Source: Polymyxa betae A26-41
Taxonomy: Eukaryota; Protista; Endomyxa: Phytomyxea
DNA length: 56,324 nucleotides
Assembly: GCA_003693705.1 (NCBI GenBank)
Contig: RBZT01000468.1
Coordinates: 1 to 56,324, forward strand
Direction of reading: 5' to 3'
The translations under genes were made by a program, and so were the position numbers. Below the pieces are notes generated by a model. It saw only the letters and a list, made by a program, of their open reading frames with translations. It did not search any database and had not been told where the DNA came from. Positions 4,638-43,323 of this stretch are shown one piece after another (position 1 is the first letter of the stretch; every line of letters starts with the position of its first letter).

Positions 4638-7600
4638 TCAGCCGAAGAAACTTTGGGACTCGGAATGTCCAGCGAATGCTATCGACAAACTAAGGCTCAA
4701 AGATTCCATGTACCTGAAGGCAATATATTACAATAATTTGCAGATGATTGACAGCTGCAAGGCTTTATAAATTAAGTTCATAGTATGAGGAATCAACTGA
4801 AATGTCAGATTCGGCAATGGTTTGATCGAACATGGTCGACTCGCGAACCGACATTGTTGTATTGGTATCGCCGTACGATCCCGAATCCTAAAACAAAAAA
4901 GTCAAGGTCTCATAAGATTCTAAATCCGATCAATACGCACCAATGCTGAAAGATCGGTATCAAGCCTGGAGAAGCTACCCGGATCTAGTGTCGATAGAAT
5001 AACCCGATCAGGTGGTTGTTGGGCCAACGAGCCATTCGATCGAACAAAATTGTCCAGATCTGTTTCCACACAGATTCGATCGATCGAGATGCTAAATCCG
5101 GACAGAAAGTCGGCCAGCTGCTGACTATAAAACCTGATGAATGCAGCTAAAGGCTTGATAACATAAGACATCAAGATAACAGTTTTACGTCTGGTGTTCG
5201 CAGTGAGTGGTAAACGCCCATTTGACGGCATTGAATCTCGTCGTATTGATATTTTGAAGTGATTGTATGTGGGACTTCGTCATTGATGTGTACGACGAAA
5301 GGGCATCTTTCAAAGAGACGGTGGCATGATCGAGGGCGCGCTGCGTCCTCTCTGCAACTTCCACCGCCGAGTCCATTCGTTGCCGCGGGCTTCTAGCTGG
5401 AAGCCTGCCTTGAATCATCGTCGCTATGAACGATTGCCTCCTCTCTGATTAATGAATCAATGTTATAATATGTCATCTGAGGAATATATTTCCAACCATG
5501 ACCGGCTTTCTCTCGTTCTTGATCTTTCTCGTTCCTCTGCGATATCTTCTCCATGGTCTCCACCGCTTTTCGGTAAGCCGACGAGATATTGTTGAAGTTC
5601 GCTTCCACACTTGCAATTCGTTTGTAGGCCGCTTGATGCTGCAATGATTATTAACAGAATTAACCGCGACTGGCAGAGGAGACCTACCTGCTGCACAATA
5701 TCGGTGATATTTGTCTTGATAATTGATTTCTAGAAAAAACAATATGAAAACCAGGTCTGCAATAATATGTATCGGACTCACTTGTCTCTTTAATGATTTT
5801 GAGATCTCCTTCATTCTGGAGCTGCGTTCATCGATGCAGTTTCCCATACATTCAGTCTGTACTGTATCAGTTCGGAAATCCGAGTATGATGACAAGGCGC
5901 ATAACCGTTTTTTGCAATTGAATGAATGAGCCGACAAGCGATGAGTATTTTAGCGATTGCCCAAGAGAAGAGAAATCCCATGGGTACTTCCGCAAAACCC
6001 GAACGAAGCCATCGTCGATAACACTCGCTTCCTGTGCTGAAATTGAGGCAAGGCTATTTGTTTCATTTAATGCAAATATTACTTGAAACAGAGTAATCAA
6101 GAATCGCAGCGAACCGATTCCTTTCAAACTCTTCGAATGGAAGCTATCAAATTCGGCGCTATCCAGTTGCTGTTTAATGGTCGATTCTTCTCCATGCGAA
6201 GGTCTTTCCTGACCAATATGTTTATTCTCCACCTAAAACCATGTTTAATTATCAGCAGCAAGAATATCTTCATCTCACCGAAATAATGAACTCTCGCAAA
6301 TCATTCTCTGTATCGATGGTTTGCACCATCCGCTCCATCCGTTGAAGGCAATGTCGCGAGGCCTCATTTTGTGCCTGAAGATGGGTGTAAATGCCCTGTA
6401 AAATCTTCTTCGTGCTGGTGTAATGACGAAGCATGCAATCCTATAGAAGTGGTTAATGTGACCAACATCGAATGAAAGATTCAGAAACCTGAGCGAAGCG
6501 CAGAAATACGCCCGTTGCGACTTCATCCTTCAGAAGCAGATGTTCTCGGTGACGTTTTACCCTCAAAACCTCATTATCTGCGAAAAGCGATGCCTTCTGG
6601 CATGAAAGGAAGTGATCGACCTTCACCACAAACATTTAGTTGACATTCCACAGCATATTGTAAATCATACAATGGATTGAAACTCGTTTTGGTCGGGACA
6701 AGTATTGAAGTCCAGATTACGATTCAGATTCTCTTTTGAAGACAGAAAAGCACTTGATTTGAGTCGCTTCTGTTCAAGCGCGTGGTTTGCCTCATTGTTA
6801 ACATTGACGATCTGTTTCTCCATTTGCGATCGATGTCTGTTGAACATCACTCGAAGTTGTTTACCCTCCGATCTGTCACGAACGTTAAGCATTACAAACT
6901 TCTGAGAACCTGGCAGACAACACCTGATGACATCGAGAACGGCAACTGCTTTCTTTACAAATCTCGCGGTATTTCGATTGGCATCGGATTCCGCAATGAA
7001 GGCGTCCAACAGAGATAGCCACGATTGTTGTATAGGTTCGTTGTTGAAATATTTACTTGATGACGACTGATGCGAAGAAATCGTTTTCCGCAGCTGCTTT
7101 GATGATGATTCAAAAGCCTGTACTATTCCCTAACATTTCGTCAGAACGCTTTTCAACGTAACGGAGCCAGCAGAACCTCGAGGACAGTAAAAATCTGTGT
7201 CAGAACACTTTTCGAAGAGTGCAAGAAGTCATAAGTTCGACGAAAGCCTTCGGTTCCCCACCTGTTGATACAATGTCAAATCCAACGCCCAGATGCTGTC
7301 AATAACGCTGTACATGTCAATAACGAACGATCTTGGTCGATCATTAGACAGATAATAGTTGCGGATAATGGCAGCCGCGTCTTCCGATGACAAATTGCCA
7401 TCTTCATCGATAACAGCTGAAGGTTTGCTGCTGGCTCGAGACGACTCTCCAGTATTCATCGGATCATTGAACAGATCCAGGTCATCATCAAGCTGGAGCT
7501 GTTGAGCTGCTAAGATCTGCAATTGCGAAACATTACAAAGCGTGTCGGAGAAGATGGAGTTCTTGAAATCGAGAAGTGCAATTAGCGAGGCATGAAGAGT

Positions 7601-34278: not shown

Positions 34279-35985
34279 TCACAAGAATGACGAAAGTTCC
34301 TGATGGAATACAGCGCCATCAAAGCAATGCTCCAGCTTAGAGCAAGCCAGAGGCCATCCCAGAAGTGAGTTTGCCACTTCGGCCAGAAGCAATGCATGTC
34401 GGAATACAGCGCACAGCCTGAGAGTATGGATGTACAGTCTGGAAGAAGACGACGTCGTTTGCTTGTCATTCCCGCTTTGAAGTGTCTGGTGCATTTTGAT
34501 CAAAGCTGCAGCAACTGCTTCAACGCCAGTGCACGTAACCAGCAAATACCTGATAACATTCATGAAGATGCTATCAGTTCGCCACACATCCTGTTCGTCT
34601 TTTCCAAAAAGCACGAATTGCAGAAGTTGTTCTCTCTTTGCGGGACTGATATTGCAATCGTGGCACTCCTGGATGACGTCGATGTTACAGCTAAGTCCAG
34701 TACGCGAGCTTGTTCGTCCATCTTTTTCCTCGGCGATGACAACGTCATCGAATTCGATCCCGAGCCCAGCCTCGGTAATGGACCACTGAGTAAGTCCATC
34801 AGACATAACGAGATAACATAGACGTTCCCGAATGCCAGAGAGCGCATTCGACACGAACCGAACGTCTTCCGGGGTTGAATATCCCACGCCAAATGGAGCA
34901 GAAATATACCTATTCATATACACATCGACTGCGAAGTTGCAGCACAGATTACCAGAGCAATGCAGTTTGAAAAGCGTGGTATTAATCAAAGCAGTGACAG
35001 GTTCTGTTTCGTATTTTGGAACTCCTTCCGCTTCAACAATCTGGTATAAGCGCTTGGCTGTGGCCTGGTCGCTGATAGAAGTTTGAATGAAATGCTTTAA
35101 AAAAGCCATCGCATCTTCTTGTGGCCTTCTGCTGTGAAATGATTTTGCGGCAAGAAGAATTTGTTCCAGTACGCCTTTTGTAGATGAACGAAGCCGCAGC
35201 GTTTTGTGCAACCTCTGAATTTCGGGCAAACTCTCAACTACGATATCGTTTCCGCTTAGGCTGGCCACAACAGGCAGAAAAGATGCTGGGAACCCCAACA
35301 AATTTGCAATCGCTCGGACCCGATATAAACGACCATATATCGAGCCATCATCATCAAAGATCAACGATGATAAAGGGATATAGCCGCCTTGCTGATCAAA
35401 GATGAAATAATCGCTGTCTTCACCAACAACGCCTAATGCCCTGACTTCATTACATAACCGAACGCATTCGTTATCTGCTTCGTACAGGGCGACCGAAAGT
35501 GGAATCTTCATATCGCGAAGCACTTGCATTAGAACAGCCTCGCTTAGATCCGTACATCGTAACCTTTCCACGTTGATCTCAGCCAGATGGCTTTTCTGAG
35601 AATATGTGTTCAAGCAGCATTTAGACACTGCTGATTCAACTGATTTCGCGCGGGACATAGCACTTTGACGACGAAGAATCCTCGTTGTATGTTTGAATGT
35701 TGACTGAATCCCGTCGAACACTACCCATATTGGACAATCTGCAGCGATAAAAGAAGATATAAAATCGCGGACGATTTTAGCGAATTCAGGTAGGCAACCA
35801 CCGGTGATGGCATGAAGGGAAAGCGGGTTCAGCTGACGCAGCCGAGACTCCAAATAGTACAGAAGACTGCCAGCATCGAAAACCAAACCGCGCCTTCCAT
35901 GTGTATCCGAGCCAGAGAGGTCTAATCGAAGAGAGACTTGAGACTCATAGCGACGTATTAGGCGACAGAGGCCACGAACCCCCAT
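34279..35985 (-). CDS. Asteroid/FAM120-like XPG/FEN1-type PIN domain protein, intronless
   Basis: MGVRGL, VFDAG, VVFDG, YEADNEC, GEDSDYFIF, GYIPL, ASLSGND: the acidic FEN-like PIN residues are present. Confidence 0.85.
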   Translation of the reverse strand: MGVRGLCRLIRRYESQVSLRLDLSGSDTHGRRGLVFDAGSLLYYLESRLRQLNPLSLHAITGGCLPEFAKIVRDFISSFIAADCPIWVVFDGIQSTFKHTTRILRRQSAMSRAKSVESAVSKCCLNTYSQKSHLAEINVERLRCTDLSEAVLMQVLRDMKIPLSVALYEADNECVRLCNEVRALGVVGEDSDYFIFDQQGGYIPLSSLIFDDDGSIYGRLYRVRAIANLLGFPASFLPVVASLSGNDIVVESLPEIQRLHKTLRLRSSTKGVLEQILLAAKSFHSRRPQEDAMAFLKHFIQTSISDQATAKRLYQIVEAEGVPKYETEPVTALINTTLFKLHCSGNLCCNFAVDVYMNRYISAPFGVGYSTPEDVRFVSNALSGIRERLCYLVMSDGLTQWSITEAGLGIEFDDVVIAEEKDGRTSSRTGLSCNIDVIQECHDCNISPAKREQLLQFVLFGKDEQDVWRTDSIFMNVIRYLLVTCTGVEAVAAALIKMHQTLQSGNDKQTTSSSSRLYIHTLRLCAVFRHALLLAEVANSLLGWPLACSKLEHCFDGAVFHQELSSFL

Positions 35986-36412: not shown

Positions 36413-39400
36413 ATGTCAGATGATCTTCATCTAAGCAACTTACAGCTTCAGAACAGCAAAAAAAATCGCTCTCGCTCTAAACATCTTTCTAACAATGTCG
36501 ACTTTTTGGCAATTCAGAAGGAACTCGGTGAGGCTATTATTCATGCTACCGTATCAGTACCTCTTCTGATGTTTTGTGCTCACAGGACTTGTAGTCCCGG
36601 ACACCAATACTGAAAACGATGAGATTCCAAAGCAGCTATCTTCACCAAGAACACGACATCATCGATCCATATCAGATTTCGTCCGTCCTAAAAGCAACTC
36701 GATTGTTAGTCTGCCTGTTACAAGAGAGAGCTCAATCGCTGATGCGCCGCGAAAAACCACTTCCACAATTCAGACATTTGAGTTTAATTTTGGTCGGGAA
36801 ATGTCTGATATCGAGGACGAGGGTGTGTTGGAATCTGATGATGAAAAGGAGCAATCCCCAGAAAAGAGCGATTCCACTGAAGAAATTGAAATCGACCCTG
36901 CTAGAATCGATGATATCCAGCTGCAAGAAGCGACAACTGAAACGCTATCTATTGAACCCGACGAGAATGAAGGTCGTACAATTTTTGGTTCAATTCGAGA
37001 AGCGGTTACAGCCAGCGTCCGAATGGCCATGGATTCTCGGCTCGCAGTTCGACGCAATCGACATCAAATGTTTCGATCGCTACAGCGTGAAATTCCTCAG
37101 GTTGATAATGGTGACCTGCTCGCTGGCGATCTGGCAGCATCTACAACCCCTGGAAGGAATGTCTTCGACCAGAAGAATTACCGGCAATGCCTGCAGCATC
37201 CGAACCTTCGGCCGCTGGGCATCATGGAAGTCAAACGCCTGTGGTGTGCTCTTCGCTTCTTAATTGAAGAGAAGAATGTCGAACAATTCTTGAGGAAGTA
37301 CGCAGCTAATACTTCACTGAGCAATGTAGAGGCGGATCCAATTAGCCCAGTCAAGTGGCCTTTCGACTCCACAACTCGAGATGTCACGTTACACTATACT
37401 CATCGCTTCTGTAGGGAGCCCCCTTCTTTAATTCTTTCGTTTAATGATGCTGATTTTGATCCCCAGCGTCATCGGGCGATATACAGCTCGCCCCGAGCCT
37501 TGAAGGTTTGATGCGGCAACAAACGTTGGCCAGTAGGACCCGCACTGAGAGCGGAAAGCATCGCTCTACTCTGGTGAATCGGCATTCATTGCCTAACGCA
37601 CGCCGCATATCGGTGAAGGGACTGAACGGGCATGACTTTCGTAGAGCATCAGTAGCTGGGATTGAGACCAGTCCCAAAATGGACGCATTAGGTTTGTTCG
37701 TGTCAACAAGGCTAGCTGTTTTGGTACACTGAAGCAGCCAACAGGTCTCAACTCTGATTCAATCAGCTCGAGCGTGCCGGATGCTTTACGAAAGAAGGAG
37801 AATGAGGGATTTCAGTTAATATTTGACCAATATTTCAAACCTCAGCTGGAACGAGCTGTGTTATCACCAAGTCTGCCGTTACCTCCTAGTATCGGCGTCC
37901 GTCCTTATGAAAAGCGGCTTTACAAAAACCTGTGCGCATTCCTGCTGGCGTGCCTGAGCATCGAAGAAGGGACTAATCGGTTATCAAGGTTTGGGTTTAG
38001 TCGCAGTTTCGCTTATCGGCTAATAGGTATTTGATGAAACTTACACAAACTACACTCTCCTATTTGCGCTCAATAGAAGAATGTGAAAGTTCCCGAGTTT
38101 GTAAGTAAGTACGAAGTTAGCTTTGTACTTCGACCAGATATCAATTTTGGCTACAGGGGTTTCGTGAATAAAATTGACAATTATTTGGCAATACTGCTGT
38201 TTCGCCTTCCTAACTCTGAAGATGAACTGGTAACGTGCGATCCAAAGCTAAAGCATGTCTCTTAGATATATTTCGTAGGTAAACGGAAAATCGGAAGTCC
38301 CGTTGTTGAAGACGTTGCCTCGGTCAAAGTCCAATGTCTTCTCTTCTCATGCTACAGAAGAGTTTGGAATGACGGGTTCATCGATCACCTCCGACTCGCA
38401 ACATATGGCATCGCTTCGACCAAATTTTGCTCGCCCTCCTGCGTTACTCACTTCCAGGCAATCAGGAACACTGATCGGCGTTCAAGCGTTAGTTGTTGTT
38501 TGCGGTCTTTTAGTTCTTCTCGGCGTTTGGGCACTCTTATATCCAGGCGCAATCGAGTCCGCTTATGAGCAATATGGCCATGAACTGTCAGCTACGATTT
38601 CTTCAAGTTTGGCGGTCGATGGGTAAGTGCCAGTTAAACATGATCTAATTAACTAAATTGCTTTCAGTTTGGTTGGGAAGCTGGCATTATCTGTCCCCAA
38701 AGAAATCATCGATAGCTACATAGCAAGTTCCAAATTCGATACAGTTGAACCACATCTTGTTGTTATGGCATCGATTTTGCCTACAGTTGGAGCATCGTGG
38801 ATTTTTTTACCGGATTCTGGTGCCTTTGCTGCAGCCATTCGCGATCCTGAATCGAATGTTGAGTTTATCGAAAGAAATTTTTTTGGATCTTCATGCTATA
38901 AGTTCAATGCATCGTCCACATGGCGAAGAATACGCAACAGCAATATTACTGTTCCTTGTCCAACAATTTTCGGTATGAACACATCGAATCAGAATTGGTC
39001 CAGCCCAATGAGCATTGATGGATCGCATTCTTTCTATGGATGGTCTCAAACTCGGATGATGTCATCCTCTAAAAGAACAGTTGCCCTAGGCCTGCACTTT
39101 ACCTCAAGACTCATGACCGAGGCTCTCAGCAACCGTTTACTCGGGAAGCCCCAAGTTGGCATTGTTTTACGAGATACCTTTTCTGGTCAAACAATCTCTA
39201 AGTCGGATGCTGATGGAGTTTTTGATCAGCTCGAACACACATTCAAGATTGCTACTTCCCCAGTCCGAATCGCTTTTGCGAACACGACTGCAGAATTGGT
39301 CGCTGCAGTTTCTATTCCATTTCCACTTTCTAATATAGAATATTCGGCGATCGTCCCGTTAGTAGCAACTGCGGCTATAACGCTCATTTTCATGGGATCG

Positions 39401-42400
39401 TTGATTCGTCCAACTTCAGTTAAGAACAATGCGGTTAAACAGCTCGATTTGATTCGGTCTGTTGTCGATGAGCGTCCATCATCTCTAGTGAAGAAAGAAC
39501 ATATACTATTTTGCATAGTGTTCGTCTTAACATCCTGCACCGTCGTTCTGTTGCTTCTCTATCTCAGCTCAGATAAAACGTAGGCTCTGATAATTTATTT
39601 ACAATTTTTTTCTTATTGCCAGTTAAGATTACGAACCGTTTCTGATGAAACATGGAAACAAGCGGGCGAAACTTTGCAAGAGAGATTTAGACTGTTGCCT
39701 TCTGTTGCCAGCCTGATCAGTTCGACAGTTGCTTTGCAAGTGAATGATGGTTCCATTAACGGCAAGACATCTATTAGCACTAATTCCAACAGGGTATATG
39801 CTGTGGCTACTGACGCCCTTTCTCGAATGGTTCAGATGCCCCCAGAAGCCATGTTTGCATATAGCGTTGGCGTTTTAGTACAAGGGCAACTTTATGCAAC
39901 TCTTTTACCAAACATCAGCAATCCTGATCCGAAAACAATCTCCATCAACCGAATTGTAAATATCCACTTTATGGTAGTATCTCCAAATCAAAGAGTTTAT
40001 AGGATCGAGATGTAAATTCGACTCTTTCTGACTGGTATCGGTATTCGAATTCCAGTGGGATGTTCGGTAGCTTTCGTCGATTAGTTAGTGGAAGTGACGC
40101 CCTTCCATTTGGAAGAAGTGTCAATATATCTGGTATTGGGCGATGTGTTGTTCTTGTAGATTTCAGCTCCGGAATCTTAGTCAATTATCTCAAAAAATTT
40201 GTTTCAGAAATCGGTCTCGAATCTATCGCATTACAATTGCTCGAATATCCATCACTCACCCTGTTGGCATCTAGTTCGCCTTCTGATGCTGATTCAGGCG
40301 TTGTTTCGCTTAATTTGAGTACCATTTCCGACAACGAAGTGACCCGAACACCGGTTTTCGATCGCGATACACTCTCTTTAAACATTCCGTATTTCGACCT
40401 GCAAACAAGTTGGATTGCAAGTGCTATATTATCCTTACATGAAGTTTGCGGATCCAATTTAGAACTAAGCATTACAGCATGGACTGTTTTTGTTGGTGTC
40501 ACGATTGTAAGATCTTTGTTTGGGACGGATGCACATTACTTACCATGCTTTCAGATAATCGTATTTCTTGTGTATTCGAGCTCATGGAATCTTGACAAAA
40601 GGTATCCGACATCTTGGCTGGGCATCAATGATTCTGATGCCATCATCGCTCTGGCGAAAAAGGAACCCTCTCGTGCAGCATTAAGTCACCATTTGATTAG
40701 TATTCGCCAGAAGATTACAAGTGCTTCAGCGCAAAGCTGGAGACGTAAGCGTAATTTACGCTCAGGCGAAATCGGTGATTATGATCAGCCTCTCGACTTT
40801 GACGAAATACAGAATCATGTTTCCGATCGTGCAGTTCGTCATGTTCGCGATGCATTGCATAATCGTATGACGATCGTCTTTGCTAACAACAATACTTATA
40901 CATTCATATTCAGGAAATATCCTAACCCTTTGCGAACTTGAATCTCGAGAAAGCCCTGTTGCTGTTGGTCTTTACAAACTGATTTCTCATAATTTTTCCA
41001 GAACGGTTTTGCTGGTTGTTGCAATTGTCCATATCGGCCTGCAGTTTTTTGAACCACAAACGCAATCCCATCTTGCACAAGATGGTACAGATTTATGGGT
41101 TCTTGTAACAGAGGGCGTCTGTCTTCTTTTTGAGATAACGTACATGGCGCTTCATTTCGGCCTAAAGTATAATCTTTTAGCCATGGTATGAATCTGTATT
41201 CGCTGTTGTTGATGCTAACTTTTATGTCTAGGAGAACATTCTTTCAAGGGTTGACAATAGCTTGGCTATCGATGTTATGACTGTTATAATCCTAGCACTG
41301 ACCTGCTTAGATTGGCTTCTTACTATGACAATGAACTTCAGCTTCGAATATTCTTGTCCGCTTCGACCGTGGATTTTCCTTCTGTTCTTCTCTGATTTGC
41401 GCCGAGGTAATTATGAAATCAAAATTGTCTCGTTTCTGATCTGGTACAGGTCTGTCTCTTTTCTTGAGAGCAATAGTTCGCGTAAGGTTTTGACGGCGTA
41501 CTATACCCATTATGAATTGAAATTGGTTAGGCATTCGATGTAATCTTGTTATGGATGTCAATCATCTTCATTTTCGCTCTGTTTGGCGTTCTTTTCTTCC
41601 GGACCAATCTCAATATTGAAACGAATCGCTCAAGTTTTGGGAACATAAGAGATGCTCTAATTACTTGTTTCGTATTCGCTTCAAATGCAGATAATTTCTC
41701 TGACCTGATATATAATCCTACTCAAGAAAATCCTCTTTTTATGATGTACTTCATTGTTTTGTGGATGATTGGAATGTTTGGCATTCTAGCAATGGTAATC
41801 GGGTTTGACCTTTACAGAAATGTTCTAAGTAATAGCGAATAGGTTGTAGGATGTTTTCAATCTGAGTTTATGCTCCAGCAAGAACAGAACGTTCAGCAAA
41901 AGACCTTGTTCACTAGAACTGGTATGATTGCAGCGTTTATACTAATCGATGTCGATCAAAGTGGGGGAATTTCTGTGGAAGAGTTTAAAGATTTCATTTC
42001 TGGTTGTGCAAATCACGATGCTTCTGCTACCCGTCGGGCTTTCATGAAGATGTTCAGAAACATAGATACCAACGGCGACGGCCAGATGGATATTTATGAG
42101 TTCGTAATGGGAATCGAAGGTGAGATGATTGGGATCTGTACTGTAATCATCTTTCAACAATGATAGATCTAACTTTAAACCGTTTATTTTTGGGTCGAAG
42201 GCGTCCTGCTGTCGATTCCAAATGGAGGAAGTGGATGAGAGAAAACGTTTTCCATGCCCAGTCGGACTGGTGGCGTAAACTTATCGAACTTCTGCTGCTT
42301 GCAGAACTCACAGCTGCTTGCACCTATGGAACGGTGGTAGACGTGATTGTTATCGATCGAATTTGTCATGGATTACTCTTGTTTTTTACCATTGAGATGT

Positions 42401-43323
42401 TGACAAAAATGCTGATTTATGGTCCCACAGAAGTGAGTAACATCTCCCAAATATACTAATGCAGTTCTAAGCTGTTTGTCTAGATGCTTCTACACGGTCA
42501 TTATGATGGCAGTATGTTTGAGGTAAGCAGCTGTTGCATGTTCAAGACTTTACTGATAGTTTTGTTAGAGGCGATTTGACACTGTAGTTGTGTTTGGAGC
42601 TTGCATAACCTATTATGCGGTACGGTTTGGCTATAGTTCAGATCAAGGTGAATCTGGATTGTCTCACTACTTGGTCCTACTTTTGAAGTTTTCTTCAGGG
42701 ATCGAACCTGATCAGAACCATACAAACTTGTTACGAATTCTACAGCTAATTCCAGTATTGCGAATCTTTTCTCAGGTGGGACAGGAGAAGCCTGAAATCG
42801 TTGTCGATATTCACAAGATGATTAATGCATTTTCAGGTGAAAATCATCCGGCATGTAATTACGACATTCCTTCGATCTGCCCGCGAATTTTTCAATTTGT
42901 TCTGTCTATTGCTGATTATCATGGACATTTATGCTTGTCTTGGTGTCTACTTTTTCTCAGGCTTGTGGCAAGACCCCGAAAATCCACAAGCAAATTTCGA
43001 CACCCATTCCAATGCACTGATTTCGTTAATACAATGCATGTACGAACAAGCCCTAAGAGATACCAACCGGTAAATCTCAATTTGTTTGCAGGGTGCAGCA
43101 AGATTGGCGTCTTATCATGTATAATGCAATTTCTGCTTACGGCTGGAGCGCATCTCTCTACTTTCTGTCCTTCACGTTCCTGATTGCCATTCTTTTTACA
43201 AACCTATTTCTTGGAATTATTTTGACGCAGTTCAGCAAAATTGTACAGCACAAAAGAGAAATAAAAGCAGCACTTCAGAAACCGATCGCGAACCGTTCAC
43301 AACGTGCACTTTTTGACGAATGA
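36413..43323 (+). CDS. Two-pore channel (TPC-like: 2 x 6TM, EF-hand linker) with a very long N-terminal extension containing TM-bounded luminal domains
   Basis: The channel part starts ~40830 (AVRHVRDALHNRNI). Domain I has LRPW..., pore SFGNIRDALITCFVFASNADNFSDL and S6 YFIVLWMIGMF. EF-hands IDVDQSGGISVEEF and IDTNGDGQMDIYEF follow. Domain II has pore NFDTHSNALISLIQCMVQQDW and S6 YFLSF...TNLFLGIILTQF. Upstream ORFs join in frame through GT-AG introns (e.g. 38230-38278). Confidence 0.85.

What the first reader, a model, noticed from the sequence alone, without database searches (positions are those of the whole stretch)
36413..43323. Two-pore channel fused to tandem TM-bounded Cache-like luminal modules: candidate ligand-sensing TPC
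Seen in sequence: consecutive ORFs join in frame through short canonical introns. An example is ...EDEL|38230-38278|VNGKSEVPLLKTLP, which links the 36.4-38.2 kb cytosolic region to the membrane region. This gives one protein of roughly 1,900-2,000 aa. It has a long cytosolic N-terminus, then TM-(~250 aa)-TM, then TM-(~250 aa)-TM, then a complete TPC (6TM, two EF-hands, 6TM). Both luminal modules end in similar beta-helix-beta segments (RTVALGLHFTSRLMTEALSNRLLGKPQVGIVLRD...ISKS and RCVVLVDFSSGILVNYLKKFVSEIGLESIALQLLEY..LTLLASS). These resemble the GVVGxDxxLxxLxxxL...xxxDxxGxLLA pattern of dCache sensors. Established: known TPCs are ~730-820 aa with short N-termini, and dCache domains are small-molecule sensors that meet voltage-gated channels only in trans via alpha2delta/CACHD1. 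Inference: this may be a single-chain receptor-channel gated by an extracellular or luminal ligand and modulated by Ca2+, for example in zoospore chemosensing.
Basis: partly seen in the sequence, partly recalled or inferred. Interest (0 to 1): 0.85.

Follow-up and report, generated by a model that had tools for sequence, protein, structure and literature searches.

The report
Cache-sensor modules fused to two-pore-type channel
One expressed gene of a plant-root protist (very probably Polymyxa betae) encodes a ~1,950-residue protein in which two outward-facing, bacterial-type "Cache" sensor-like modules sit in the same chain as a calcium-regulated two-repeat cation channel, an arrangement also found in a few distant protists and not found in the literature searched here.

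Summary
Spliced transcript contigs from two studies join 37.96-43.34 kb into one mRNA, and every shown joint is a 43-61 nt GT..AG intron. My model has 22 exons (36413-43323) and 1,954 aa. It reads: cytosolic N-terminus, TM, 259-aa module, TM, loop, TM, 271-aa module, TM, linker, 6TM, EF-hand pair, 6TM.

A related genome (L004) encodes both modules and channel repeat I in one uninterrupted 896-codon exon. It also carries the N-terminal region upstream, with two introns at the same positions.

The Cache reading is supported, not proven. No Pfam or PDB sequence match exists for the window's own modules. However, distant homologues with the same architecture (P0004, P0008, P0005) hit MCP-like_PDC_1/dCache_1. 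Language-model neighbours of both modules of the orthologue P0001 are dCache families. A low-confidence model of its module 1 retrieves only dCache sensors.

The channel is TPC-like in architecture. Repeat I is closest to TPC3 and repeat II to CaV1.

Ligand gating is inference. No description turned up in the open literature searched.

The scan had already noted the channel's selectivity filters on this same stretch (s1-665546).

Novelty: new variant of a known kind. Interest 0.78.

The parts
36413..43323 (+). Whole coding region: 22 exons, 21 GT..AG introns (43-61 nt), 1,954 aa. Exons: 36413-36527, 36586-37410, 37467-37691, 37745-37979, 38027-38104, 38157-38229, 38279-38622, 38668-39579, 39628-39955, 40003-40506, 40555-40864, 40914-41185, 41232-41406, 41450-41481, 41531-41794, 41843-42119, 42167-42432, 42484-42522, 42569-42647, 42699-42775, 42837-43039, 43092-43323
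   Evidence: Fifteen introns are shown directly as joints of transcript contigs X1/X5. Introns 37980-38026, 38105-38156 and 43040-43091 follow from X1's contig length, its loose end and bin depth. Introns 36528-36585, 37411-37466 and 37692-37744 rest on open frame plus colinearity with L004. The open frame was checked.
36413..38470 (+). Cytosolic N-terminal region, aa 1-581. No known domain. Conserved blocks are shared with the relatives.
   Evidence: No Pfam hit. Homologue P0002 is 56% identical over a third of 36588-37508. Colinear tblastn to L004 covers aa 137-270 and 313-631, the second piece running from this region through TM1. The introns after 'THRF' and after 'EEG..' lie at the same positions in L004.
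38471..38527 (+). TM1 (aa 582-600)
   Evidence: Hydropathy peak 2.74
38528..39349 (+). Extracytosolic module 1 (aa 601-859, 259 aa; contains intron 38623-38667): dCache-like sensor module
   Evidence: The only homologue among 1.84 billion representatives is P0001, E 1e-13. For the orthologous P0001 module: language-model neighbours are dCache_1/PDC families at 0.93-0.95; the AF2 model has pLDDT 47; the Foldseek top 50 are all dCache sensors; VIA Z is 5-6.5; atlas TM is 0.50-0.53. The window's module has 5 N-x-S/T sequons and a Cys pair at columns shared by the three relatives.
39350..39406 (+). TM2 (aa 860-878)
   Evidence: Hydropathy 2.30
39407..39502 (+). Short basic cytosolic loop between TM2 and TM3 (32 aa)
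   Evidence: Position between two TM peaks. It is K/R-rich by inspection of the translation, and has no sequons.
39503..39559 (+). TM3 (aa 911-929)
   Evidence: Hydropathy 3.00
39560..40467 (+). Extracytosolic module 2 (aa 930-1200, 271 aa; contains introns 39580-39627 and 39956-40002): dCache-like sensor module carrying a Cache-type 'D-W-Y ... VV-x-x-DFS ... L' motif
   Evidence: Language-model neighbours of the P0001 orthologous module are dCache_1 at 0.96, 18 of 30 hits. hhalign of the three-species alignment to module B of P0004/P0008/P0005 gives E 6e-4, exactly over the stretch that Pfam calls MCP-like_PDC_1/dCache_1 there. The window's module has 5 sequons.
40468..40572 (+). TM4 (aa 1201-1219), split by in-frame intron 40507-40554
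   Evidence: Hydropathy 2.42 on the spliced sequence. The intron is seen in transcripts.
40573..40978 (+). Conserved cytosolic linker between TM4 and channel S1 (about 119 aa; contains intron 40865-40913). Candidate coupling element.
   Evidence: 50% identity to P0001, against 28-30% in the modules. The last ~70 aa also align to P0004/P0008.
40979..41857 (+). Channel repeat I (S1-S6, pore loop with 'A-S-N')
   Evidence: Pfam Ion_trans, E 8e-10, on exon 41531-41839. 61% identity to P0001. The only PDB sequence hit of the orthologous repeat is TPC3 6v1q, E 2.5e-9.
41948..42100 (+). Pair of canonical EF-hand loops (aa 1600-1611 and 1639-1650) in the cytosolic inter-repeat linker
   Evidence: Pfam EF-hand_1/6/7, E 5e-10 to 6e-12. 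Loop pattern D-x-[DN]-x-[DNS]-G-x5-E is found twice.
42283..43227 (+). Channel repeat II (S1-S6, pore loop 'V-Q-Q-D-W')
   Evidence: Pfam Ion_trans on 42822-43070 (6e-13) and 43057-43320 (2e-10). The orthologous repeat hits CaV1 repeat II at E 5e-32, and AtTPC1 only at 5e-5.

Best explanation
Shown. A single expressed gene encodes a ~1,954-aa membrane protein with this order of parts:
- a ~580-aa cytosolic N-terminus
- two tandem extracytosolic modules of ~260-270 aa, each bounded by its own pair of TM helices
- a conserved ~120-aa cytosolic linker
- a two-repeat (2 x 6TM) cation channel with two canonical EF-hands between the repeats

Well supported. The modules have the double-Cache (dCache/PDC) sensor fold of bacterial chemoreceptors and sensor kinases.

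Inferred. The protein dimerises like other two-repeat channels. Small molecules bind the outward- or lumen-facing modules. As in bacterial Cache receptors, binding displaces the TM helix that follows the module (above all TM4). The conserved pre-S1 linker passes this movement to voltage-sensor domain I or the gate. Cytosolic Ca2+ acts through the EF-hands as a second input. On this reading it is a one-chain chemoreceptor-channel. The ligand is unknown, and the amino-acid-binding motif of dCache_1AA is absent.
For: One mRNA: contigs of 4,680 nt (X1) and 4,498 nt (X5) from two studies cross 15 listed GT..AG introns without any other difference. The frame is open for 1,954 aa.

Fusion at the DNA level in relatives:
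- L004 has one 896-codon exon holding module 1, TM2, TM3, module 2, TM4, the linker and repeat I. Its called ORF P0003 carries Ion_trans.
- P0001 is colinear over its whole length.
- P0004 is a single 1,949-aa ORF with the same layout.

Topology: four strong TM peaks. Sequon density is 1.9 per 100 aa in the modules against 0.34 in the N-terminus.

Cache fold:
- PF22673 above its cut-off in P0004 (44.6 bits), P0008 (39.8) and P0005 (30.5).
- dCache_1 at E 4.5e-9 in module A of P0008.
- hhalign link at E 6e-4.
- Language-model neighbours.
- Fold searches of the module-1 model.

EF-hands and Ion_trans.

Coupling element: the linker is 50% conserved, against 28-30% in the modules.
Against: - No sequence method places the window's own modules in the Cache clan.
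- The only structural model has pLDDT 47, and its Z-scores of 5-6.5 lie below the level the tool calls safe. The model of module 2 failed at pLDDT 30.
- Modules 1 and 2 show no similarity to each other. Module 1 shows none to module A of the distant homologues.
- Fold evidence was obtained on the orthologue P0001, not on the window's own sequence.
- Nothing here shows ligand binding, coupling to the gate, ion selectivity or location.
- The three most 5' introns have no transcript joint, and one of them (37692-37744) has a weak donor.
- Upstream contigs have lower depth (6-8 against 13-22).
Confidence: 0.6

Rival explanations
1. The modules are Cache-like but are not ligand sensors. They would act as a built-in counterpart of the alpha2delta subunit, helping folding, trafficking, surface stability or attachment to wall or matrix. 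Gating would be left to voltage and Ca2+ (EF-hands).
For: - The amino-acid-binding motif of dCache_1AA (R two residues before W-Y; PMC8915833) is absent in all three relatives, by inspection of alignment A3.
- The modules evolve fast: 28-30% identity against ~60% in the channel.
- In animals, Cache domains associate with CaV-type pores as auxiliary subunits (PMC4822843), and repeat II here is CaV1-like.
Against: - Fast evolution is also typical of ligand-binding sensor domains.
- The TM-module-TM arrangement, repeated twice and followed by a conserved linker into S1, is the arrangement of signalling receptors.
- alpha2delta carries a VWA insertion that is absent here: no VWA hit.
Confidence: 0.25
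2. The extracytosolic modules have some other alpha/beta fold, new or merely PAS-like in secondary structure. The dCache matches would then come from a low-confidence model and from the generic TM-helix-sheet-TM layout.
For: - Model pLDDT 47, pTM 0.42.
- TM-scores to PDB are 0.2-0.37 at rmsd 10-15 A.
- Z is at most 6.5, and the tool warns that Z under 8 may be a common arrangement.
- No HMM hit for the window, P0001 or L004.
Against: - Three homologues with the same architecture pass Pfam's own threshold for a Cache-clan family in the equivalent modules.
- hhalign aligns module 2 to exactly that stretch.
- All 50 best Foldseek rows are dCache/PDC sensors. So are all domain-length rows of the Foldseek-independent VIA search, and seven of the ten atlas rows carry a dCache_1 or MCP-like_PDC_1 family.
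Confidence: 0.12
3. The 36.4-37.97 kb region is a separate gene or an alternative 5' exon set. The main channel protein would then start at the ATG at 38034 and be 1,485 aa long.
For: - The ATG at 38034 is in frame and gives an open 1,485-aa model.
- Contig depth upstream of ~37.95 kb is 2-3 times lower in both runs, and the assemblies break there.
- The three upstream introns lack transcript joints, and the donor at 37692 is weak.
Against: - X1's contig carries 21 nt of the upstream exon spliced through a canonical 47-nt intron that keeps the frame.
- That intron and the one after 'THRF' are at the same positions in L004.
- L004 has the same N-terminal blocks directly upstream on the same strand, and one tblastn piece runs from them through TM1.
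- There is no in-frame stop once the intron is removed.
- P0008 shares a short N-terminal block, E 0.001.
Confidence: 0.12

Closest known systems
Plant two-pore channel TPC1 (e.g. Arabidopsis TPC1, PDB 5dqq/5e1j) and vertebrate TPC3 (PDB 6v1q)
   Same: Two Shaker-type 6TM repeats in one chain. An EF-hand pair in the cytosolic inter-repeat linker, as in plant TPC1. A colinear sequence match over both repeats (TPC3 E 4e-13, AtTPC1 E 8e-12). Repeat I's only PDB match is TPC3. Filter I reads A-S-N, close to T-S-N/T-A-N of known TPCs (motifs from my own knowledge).
   Different: About 2.5 times longer. It has a ~580-aa N-terminus and four extra TM helices holding two ~260-aa extracytosolic modules in front of S1. 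Repeat II is far closer to CaV1 repeat II (E 5e-32) than to AtTPC1 (5e-5). Filter II reads V-Q-Q-D-W.
Bacterial dCache_1 / MCP-like PDC sensor domains of chemoreceptors and sensor kinases (PctA-D, Tlp3, McpU, CtaA, KinD, CqsR, LuxQ)
   Same: An extracytosolic domain of ~250-270 aa between two TM helices. A long N-terminal helix followed by strands and helices in the order of two PAS-like subdomains. These are the best fold matches. The 'W-Y ... GVV-x-D ... L' type motif is present in module 2.
   Different: The output is a pore-forming channel in the same chain, not a kinase, MCP, cyclase or phosphatase. There are two modules in tandem, each with its own TM pair. No Pfam-threshold match for the window's own sequence. 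The amino-acid-binding motif is absent. The organism is a eukaryote.
alpha2delta subunits and CACHD1 of animal voltage-gated Ca2+ channels
   Same: Cache-type domains functionally tied to a CaV-type pore. Repeat II of this channel is CaV1-like.
   Different: alpha2delta and CACHD1 are separate polypeptides acting in trans and carry a VWA domain inserted in a dCache_1 domain. According to PMC8915833, all eukaryotic dCache_1 proteins they found have that insertion. Here there is no VWA, and the modules are covalently part of the channel subunit.

Membership tests
Two-pore channel (TPC) family | Two tandem 6TM voltage-gated-type repeats in one polypeptide | tested here: met
   Pfam Ion_trans in both halves (two stretches in orthologue P0001, E 3e-40). 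Hydropathy puts S5 and S6 of both repeats above the threshold, with further weaker peaks on each side of the EF-hand linker.
Two-pore channel (TPC) family | EF-hand pair in the cytosolic linker between the repeats (plant TPC1 type) | tested here: met
   EF-hand_1/6/7 hits, E down to 6e-12. Two canonical 12-residue loops at aa 1600 and 1639.
Two-pore channel (TPC) family | Sequence or phylogenetic placement with known TPCs rather than with four-repeat CaV/NaV channels | tested here: inconclusive
   Repeat I matches only TPC3, E 2.5e-9. Repeat II matches CaV1 repeat II at 5e-32 and AtTPC1 at 5e-5. No tree was built, because no reference TPC sequences were on hand.
Two-pore channel (TPC) family | TPC-type selectivity-filter motifs (filter I T-S/A-N, filter II V/M-N/G-N; from my own knowledge) | tested here: inconclusive
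   Filter I is A-S-N (close). Filter II is V-Q-Q-D-W, which resembles both V-N-N-W and the CaV T-x-E-D-W. Ion selectivity is not testable here.
dCache / Cache clan (Pfam CL0165: dCache_1, MCP-like_PDC_1) | Extracytosolic position between two TM helices | tested here: met
   TM peaks flank both modules. Sequons are 5-6 times denser than in the cytosolic N-terminus. With four extra TMs the channel's S1 keeps its cytosolic start.
dCache / Cache clan (Pfam CL0165: dCache_1, MCP-like_PDC_1) | Match to a Cache-clan profile above the curated threshold | tested here: not met
   No hit for the window's exons, P0001 or L004 modules even at E up to 10. No dCache_1 match at this locus in six frames. It is met only in distant homologues of the same architecture: P0004 at 44.6 bits, P0008 at 39.8 bits and P0005 at 30.5 bits for PF22673, whose cut-off is 27.
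dCache / Cache clan (Pfam CL0165: dCache_1, MCP-like_PDC_1) | Fold: long N-terminal helix plus two PAS-like alpha/beta subdomains | tested here: inconclusive
   Module 1 of orthologue P0001: the model has pLDDT 47 but the right order of elements. The Foldseek top 50 are all dCache, E 1e-4 to 2e-3. VIA Z is 5-6.5 over ~190-200 aa. Atlas TM is 0.50-0.53 over 225-240 aa. The module 2 model was unusable.
dCache_1AA (amino-acid-sensing subclass) | AA_motif with R two residues before the W-Y pair (Y-x4-R-x-W-Y; PMC8915833) | tested here: not met
   In module 2 the residues before W are S-D (window), E-Q (P0001) and Q-D (L004), read from alignment A3.

The most novel reading that the evidence does not exclude
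This is the founding example of a eukaryotic family of single-chain chemoreceptor-channels. Members seen here are three related (plasmodiophorid-type) organisms, a record labelled Rmarinus in EukProt (probably Rhodelphis marinus) and two unnamed protists. In this reading, ligand binding to dCache modules directly gates a TPC/CaV-type pore. The family would then show in cis the Cache-to-CaV partnership that animals realise in trans through alpha2delta, suggesting that this partnership is ancient.
Probability: 0.3. Interest if true: 0.9.

Novelty: new variant of a known kind. Interest (0 to 1): 0.78.

Why it matters
Extracellular ligand gating is not a known property of the voltage-gated-like superfamily's multi-repeat members (TPC, CaV, NaV). 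Cache domains are known to meet such channels only as separate alpha2delta/CACHD1 subunits.

A natural protein that puts two Cache-type sensor modules and the pore in one chain would give a direct system for two questions. The first is how a piston-type TM signal from a Cache domain can act on a voltage-sensor or gate. The second is what eukaryotic Cache domains bind.

The host organism matters as well. It is an unculturable root parasite and virus vector whose swimming zoospores must find roots, so a candidate receptor-channel is a concrete lead for how that sensing works.

The family's scattered distribution (Rhizaria, a probable Rhodelphis record, others) also bears on the evolution of two- and four-repeat channels, because repeat I looks TPC-like and repeat II CaV-like.

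Tried and rejected
Sequence searches on the modules
- Pfam at E up to 10 on the window's exons, P0001 and L004: nothing.
- PDB sequences, single and profile: only noise.
- dCache_1 HMM on the whole genome in six frames: one weak hit elsewhere, none here.

Comparisons between modules
- Module 1 against module 2 by BLASTP and hhalign: no similarity, so a recent tandem duplication is not supported.
- Module 1 against module A of the distant homologues: nothing.

Other searches
- Paralogue search in the own genome: only this locus.
- RNA raw-read runs X10 and X15 laid no reads at all, so they give no test.
- Contig look-up for P0001: not on record.

Structure
- The AF2 model of module 2 (pLDDT 30) and its Foldseek search were useless.

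A reading I dropped
- I first read X1's loose end as a non-canonical 47-nt skip (37973-38019). I rejected this once the L004 comparison showed the canonical intron 37980-38026. That intron explains the same letters with one mismatch, which the aligner ran through.

Handling of the joined protein
- The joined (spliced) protein was never handed to a database-search or fold tool. Exons and stored orthologues were searched by reference.
- The joined model was built only inside scripts for frame, hydropathy and motif checks.
- It was aligned there only with sequences already fetched.
Full report
**What the window is.** The window is eukaryotic DNA with very short introns. Its assembly (G000) has 27,085,814 bases in 1,001 contigs. 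This agrees almost exactly with the published Polymyxa betae draft: 1,001 contigs, 27,085,946 bp, GC 45.1% (PMC6328671). I therefore take the organism to be P. betae or the same assembly in a slightly trimmed form. P. betae is a plasmodiophorid (Rhizaria), an obligate root parasite of beet and a virus vector.

- The two RNA raw-read runs I chose laid nothing, so they are no test.
- The indexed holders X1 and X5, from two studies, turned out to be assembled transcripts.
- One contig of 4,680 nt (X1) and one of 4,498 nt (X5) lie on the stretch without a single other letter. They skip 15 listed segments of 43-61 nt, and every one is bounded by GT..AG.
- Two further introns follow from the data. 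Intron 43040-43091 (52 nt) is the length that the depth of bin 42950-43149 requires. Intron 38105-38156 follows from X1's contig length: the 171 letters upstream of 38278 equal 72 + 78 + 21.

**The 5' joint.** X1's 14-letter loose end "before 38020" first looked like a non-canonical skip. Comparison with the related locus L004 showed the true reading.
- There is a canonical GT..AG intron at 37980-38026 (47 nt).
- The contig's letters after the joint differ from the genome at only one place (38025), so the aligner ran on to 38020.
- This intron keeps the upstream frame (…SIEEGTN) joined to …RYLMKLTQ.
- It lies at the same codon position and phase as L004's intron 5422-5478.
- The channel mRNA therefore reaches into the upstream exon.

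**Gene model.** Together with three upstream introns chosen by open frame and homology (36528-36585, 37411-37466, 37692-37744), the model has 22 exons (36413-43323) and encodes 1,954 aa with no internal stop.

Hydropathy on the spliced sequence gives the following layout:

| Part | Residues (aa) |
|---|---|
| Cytosolic N-terminus | 1-581 |
| TM1 | 582-600 |
| Module 1 | 601-859 |
| TM2 | 860-878 |
| Basic loop (32 aa) | 879-910 |
| TM3 | 911-929 |
| Module 2 | 930-1200 |
| TM4 | 1201-1219 |
| Linker (~119 aa) | 1220-1338 |
| Repeat I (S1-S6) | from 1339 |
| EF-hand loops | 1600-1611 and 1639-1650 |
| Repeat II (S1-S6) | to about 1923 |

- With four extra helices, S1 keeps its cytosolic start and both modules face outside or into a lumen.
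- N-x-S/T sequons are 1.9 per 100 aa in both modules against 0.34 in the N-terminus.
- Module 1 has a cysteine pair at columns shared by the three relatives.
- Pfam confirms Ion_trans in both halves and an EF-hand pair between them. It finds nothing in the modules or the N-terminus.

**Relatives.**
- A search of 1.84 billion representatives with the large module-1 exon found a single protein, P0001 (1,376 aa, UniParc UPI0006B2AD2E, truncated inside TM1), at E 1e-13.
- P0001 is colinear with the window's model over its whole length. Identity is 28-30% in the modules, 50% in the pre-S1 linker and 57-63% in the channel and EF region.
- The N-terminal ORF found P0002. Its 14-kb contig L004 (GC 56%, genomic, with introns) carries a third orthologue.
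- In L004, module 1, TM2, TM3, module 2, TM4, the linker and repeat I lie in one uninterrupted exon of 896 codons. The ORF called on it (P0003) has Ion_trans.
- TM1 shares an exon with the conserved N-terminal block 'YLMRLT…GFLNKIDN'.
- The window's protein aligns to L004 from aa 137 to 1941 in order.
- Several intron positions are shared: after THRF, after EEG.., after the first helix of module 1, in IIS2-S3, after RIFSQ, and in pore II.
- The own genome has no paralogue of the modules, although it has many other Ion_trans loci.

**A wider family.** Searching with the channel half of P0001, and then with P0004, found more distant proteins of the same layout.
- These are P0004 (1,949 aa, one ORF on a 6.9-kb contig), P0008 (1,891 aa, 66% identical to P0004) and P0005 (2,176 aa, EukProt label 'Rmarinus', probably Rhodelphis marinus).
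- Hydropathy shows TM, ~320-420 aa, TM, loop, TM, ~330-345 aa, TM, linker, 6TM, linker, 6TM in all three. Pfam finds an EF-hand pair in that linker in P0004 and P0008 but not in P0005.
- They align to the window's aa 1265-1941 at about 25% identity, E 6e-52.
- In these proteins Pfam itself recognises Cache-clan domains inside the modules. MCP-like_PDC_1 scores 44.6 bits (P0004, module B), 39.8 bits (P0008, module B) and 30.5 bits (P0005, module A) against a cut-off of 27. dCache_1 scores E 4.5e-9 in module A of P0008.

**Are the window's modules Cache-like?** Direct sequence evidence is absent. Indirect evidence comes from several sides.
1. hhalign of the three-species alignment of module 2 against module B of the distant clade gives E 6e-4 over 70 columns. 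These fall exactly on the stretch that Pfam calls PDC/dCache there, the '…P…(D/Q)W(Y/W)…' and '…VV.(I/V)DF(S/D)…L…' motif.
2. Language-model feature neighbours of P0001's module 1 are dCache_1, MCP-like PDC, sCache and HK-sensor families (0.93-0.95). Those of module 2 are dCache_1 (0.96, 18 of 30).
3. An AlphaFold2 model of P0001 residues 1-300, built from a three-row alignment, is poor (pLDDT 47, pTM 0.42). It does have a long N-terminal helix followed by strands and helices in the dCache order.
4. With that model, the Foldseek top 50 in the PDB are all dCache/PDC sensor domains (CtaA, Tlp3, CqsR, KinD, PctB/C/D, TlpQ, TlpA/C, LuxQ…) at E 1e-4 to 2e-3, though with low TM-scores.
5. VIA-align gives Z 5-6.5 over ~190-200 residues, both as a second look and in a Foldseek-independent scan of 48,161 chains. 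In that scan every domain-length match (rows 1-7, 21 and 41) is a dCache/PDC or related periplasmic sensor domain.
6. The ESM-atlas shape search gives TM 0.50-0.53 over 225-240 residues. Seven of its ten rows carry a dCache_1 or MCP-like_PDC_1 family.

There are limits. The Z-scores are below the level the tool calls safe. The module-2 model failed (pLDDT 30). Module 1 has no detectable link to module A of the distant clade. I put the Cache-type fold at about 0.8 for both modules together.

The amino-acid-binding motif of dCache_1AA is absent, as there is no R two residues before W. The ligand class is therefore open.

**The channel.**
- The architecture and the EF-hand linker are those of a plant-type TPC.
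- By sequence, repeat I of the orthologue matches only TPC3 among solved structures, E 2.5e-9.
- Repeat II matches CaV1 repeat II far better (E 5e-32) than AtTPC1 (5e-5).
- The pore loops read A-S-N (TPC-like) and V-Q-Q-D-W (between TPC V-N-N-W and CaV T-x-E-D-W; motifs of the known families are from my own knowledge).
- I therefore call it a two-repeat, TPC-architecture channel and leave clade membership open.

**Mechanism.**

*Shown:* one chain, expressed and spliced; both modules on the non-cytosolic side; EF-hands and linker on the cytosolic side.

*Inferred from the known behaviour of Cache receptors and TPCs:*
- The protein dimerises to a four-repeat pore.
- Ligand binding in a module shifts the following TM helix.
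- TM4 feeds the conserved pre-S1 linker, and through it voltage-sensor domain I or the gate.
- Ca2+ at the EF-hands is a second input.

*Rivals:*
- The modules are a built-in alpha2delta-like auxiliary part without ligand gating (0.25).
- The fold is not Cache (0.12).
- The long N-terminus belongs to another transcript and the protein starts at 38034 (0.12).

**Known or new.** In the library searched, no paper combines two-pore channels or Ion_trans with Cache in one chain.
- Upadhyay et al. 2016 list only alpha2delta (VWA_N, VGCC_alpha2) as the ion-channel output of Cache (PMC4822843).
- Gumerov et al. 2022 state that all eukaryotic dCache_1 proteins they found carry a VWA insertion (PMC8915833).
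- The library holds open-access papers only, so this is absence in what I could search, not proof of absence.
- I rate the finding as a new variant of known kinds: a new architecture joining two well-known modules. It is conserved in at least six sequences from distant eukaryotes.

Noticed in passing
L004:4155-10190 (+), against window 36413-43323: The related locus has about ten introns against 21 here, several at identical positions. Its neighbours differ: an IBR/RING gene upstream, and ATXN7L3B, OTU and NUDIX downstream. In the window the neighbours are a 568-aa ORF on the minus strand (34279-35985) and a Vti1-like SNARE. The gene is therefore conserved but the neighbourhood is not.
   Followed up: partly
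window 42283-43227 (repeat II); P0001:1095-1376: Repeat II of this two-repeat channel is much closer to repeat II of L-type CaV channels (E 5e-32) than to any solved TPC (5e-5). Repeat I matches only TPC3. This mosaic may bear on how four-repeat channels arose.
   Followed up: partly
window 37973-38026: A 5-nt repeat (CTAAT) at both ends of the intron region made the read aligner report a loose end at 38020 instead of the true GT..AG joint 37979|38027. This is a trap for anyone reading such tables.
   Followed up: yes
window 40507-40554: A 48-nt in-frame intron lies inside the TM4 coding segment. If retained it would add 16 residues without a stop, giving a possible alternative form with a different TM4.
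   Followed up: no
G000 contigs C666, C940, C941, C446, C839, C892 and others: The genome holds at least 15 further loci with Ion_trans matches, so this organism has a large set of voltage-gated-type channels for a 27-Mb genome.
   Followed up: no
window 40573-40978; P0001:642-761: The pre-S1 cytosolic linker has a strongly conserved block (…SAQSWRRKR…YDQPLD.DEIQ.HVS.RA..HV.D.LHNR…) with no Pfam family. Part of it is also aligned in P0004/P0008.
   Followed up: partly
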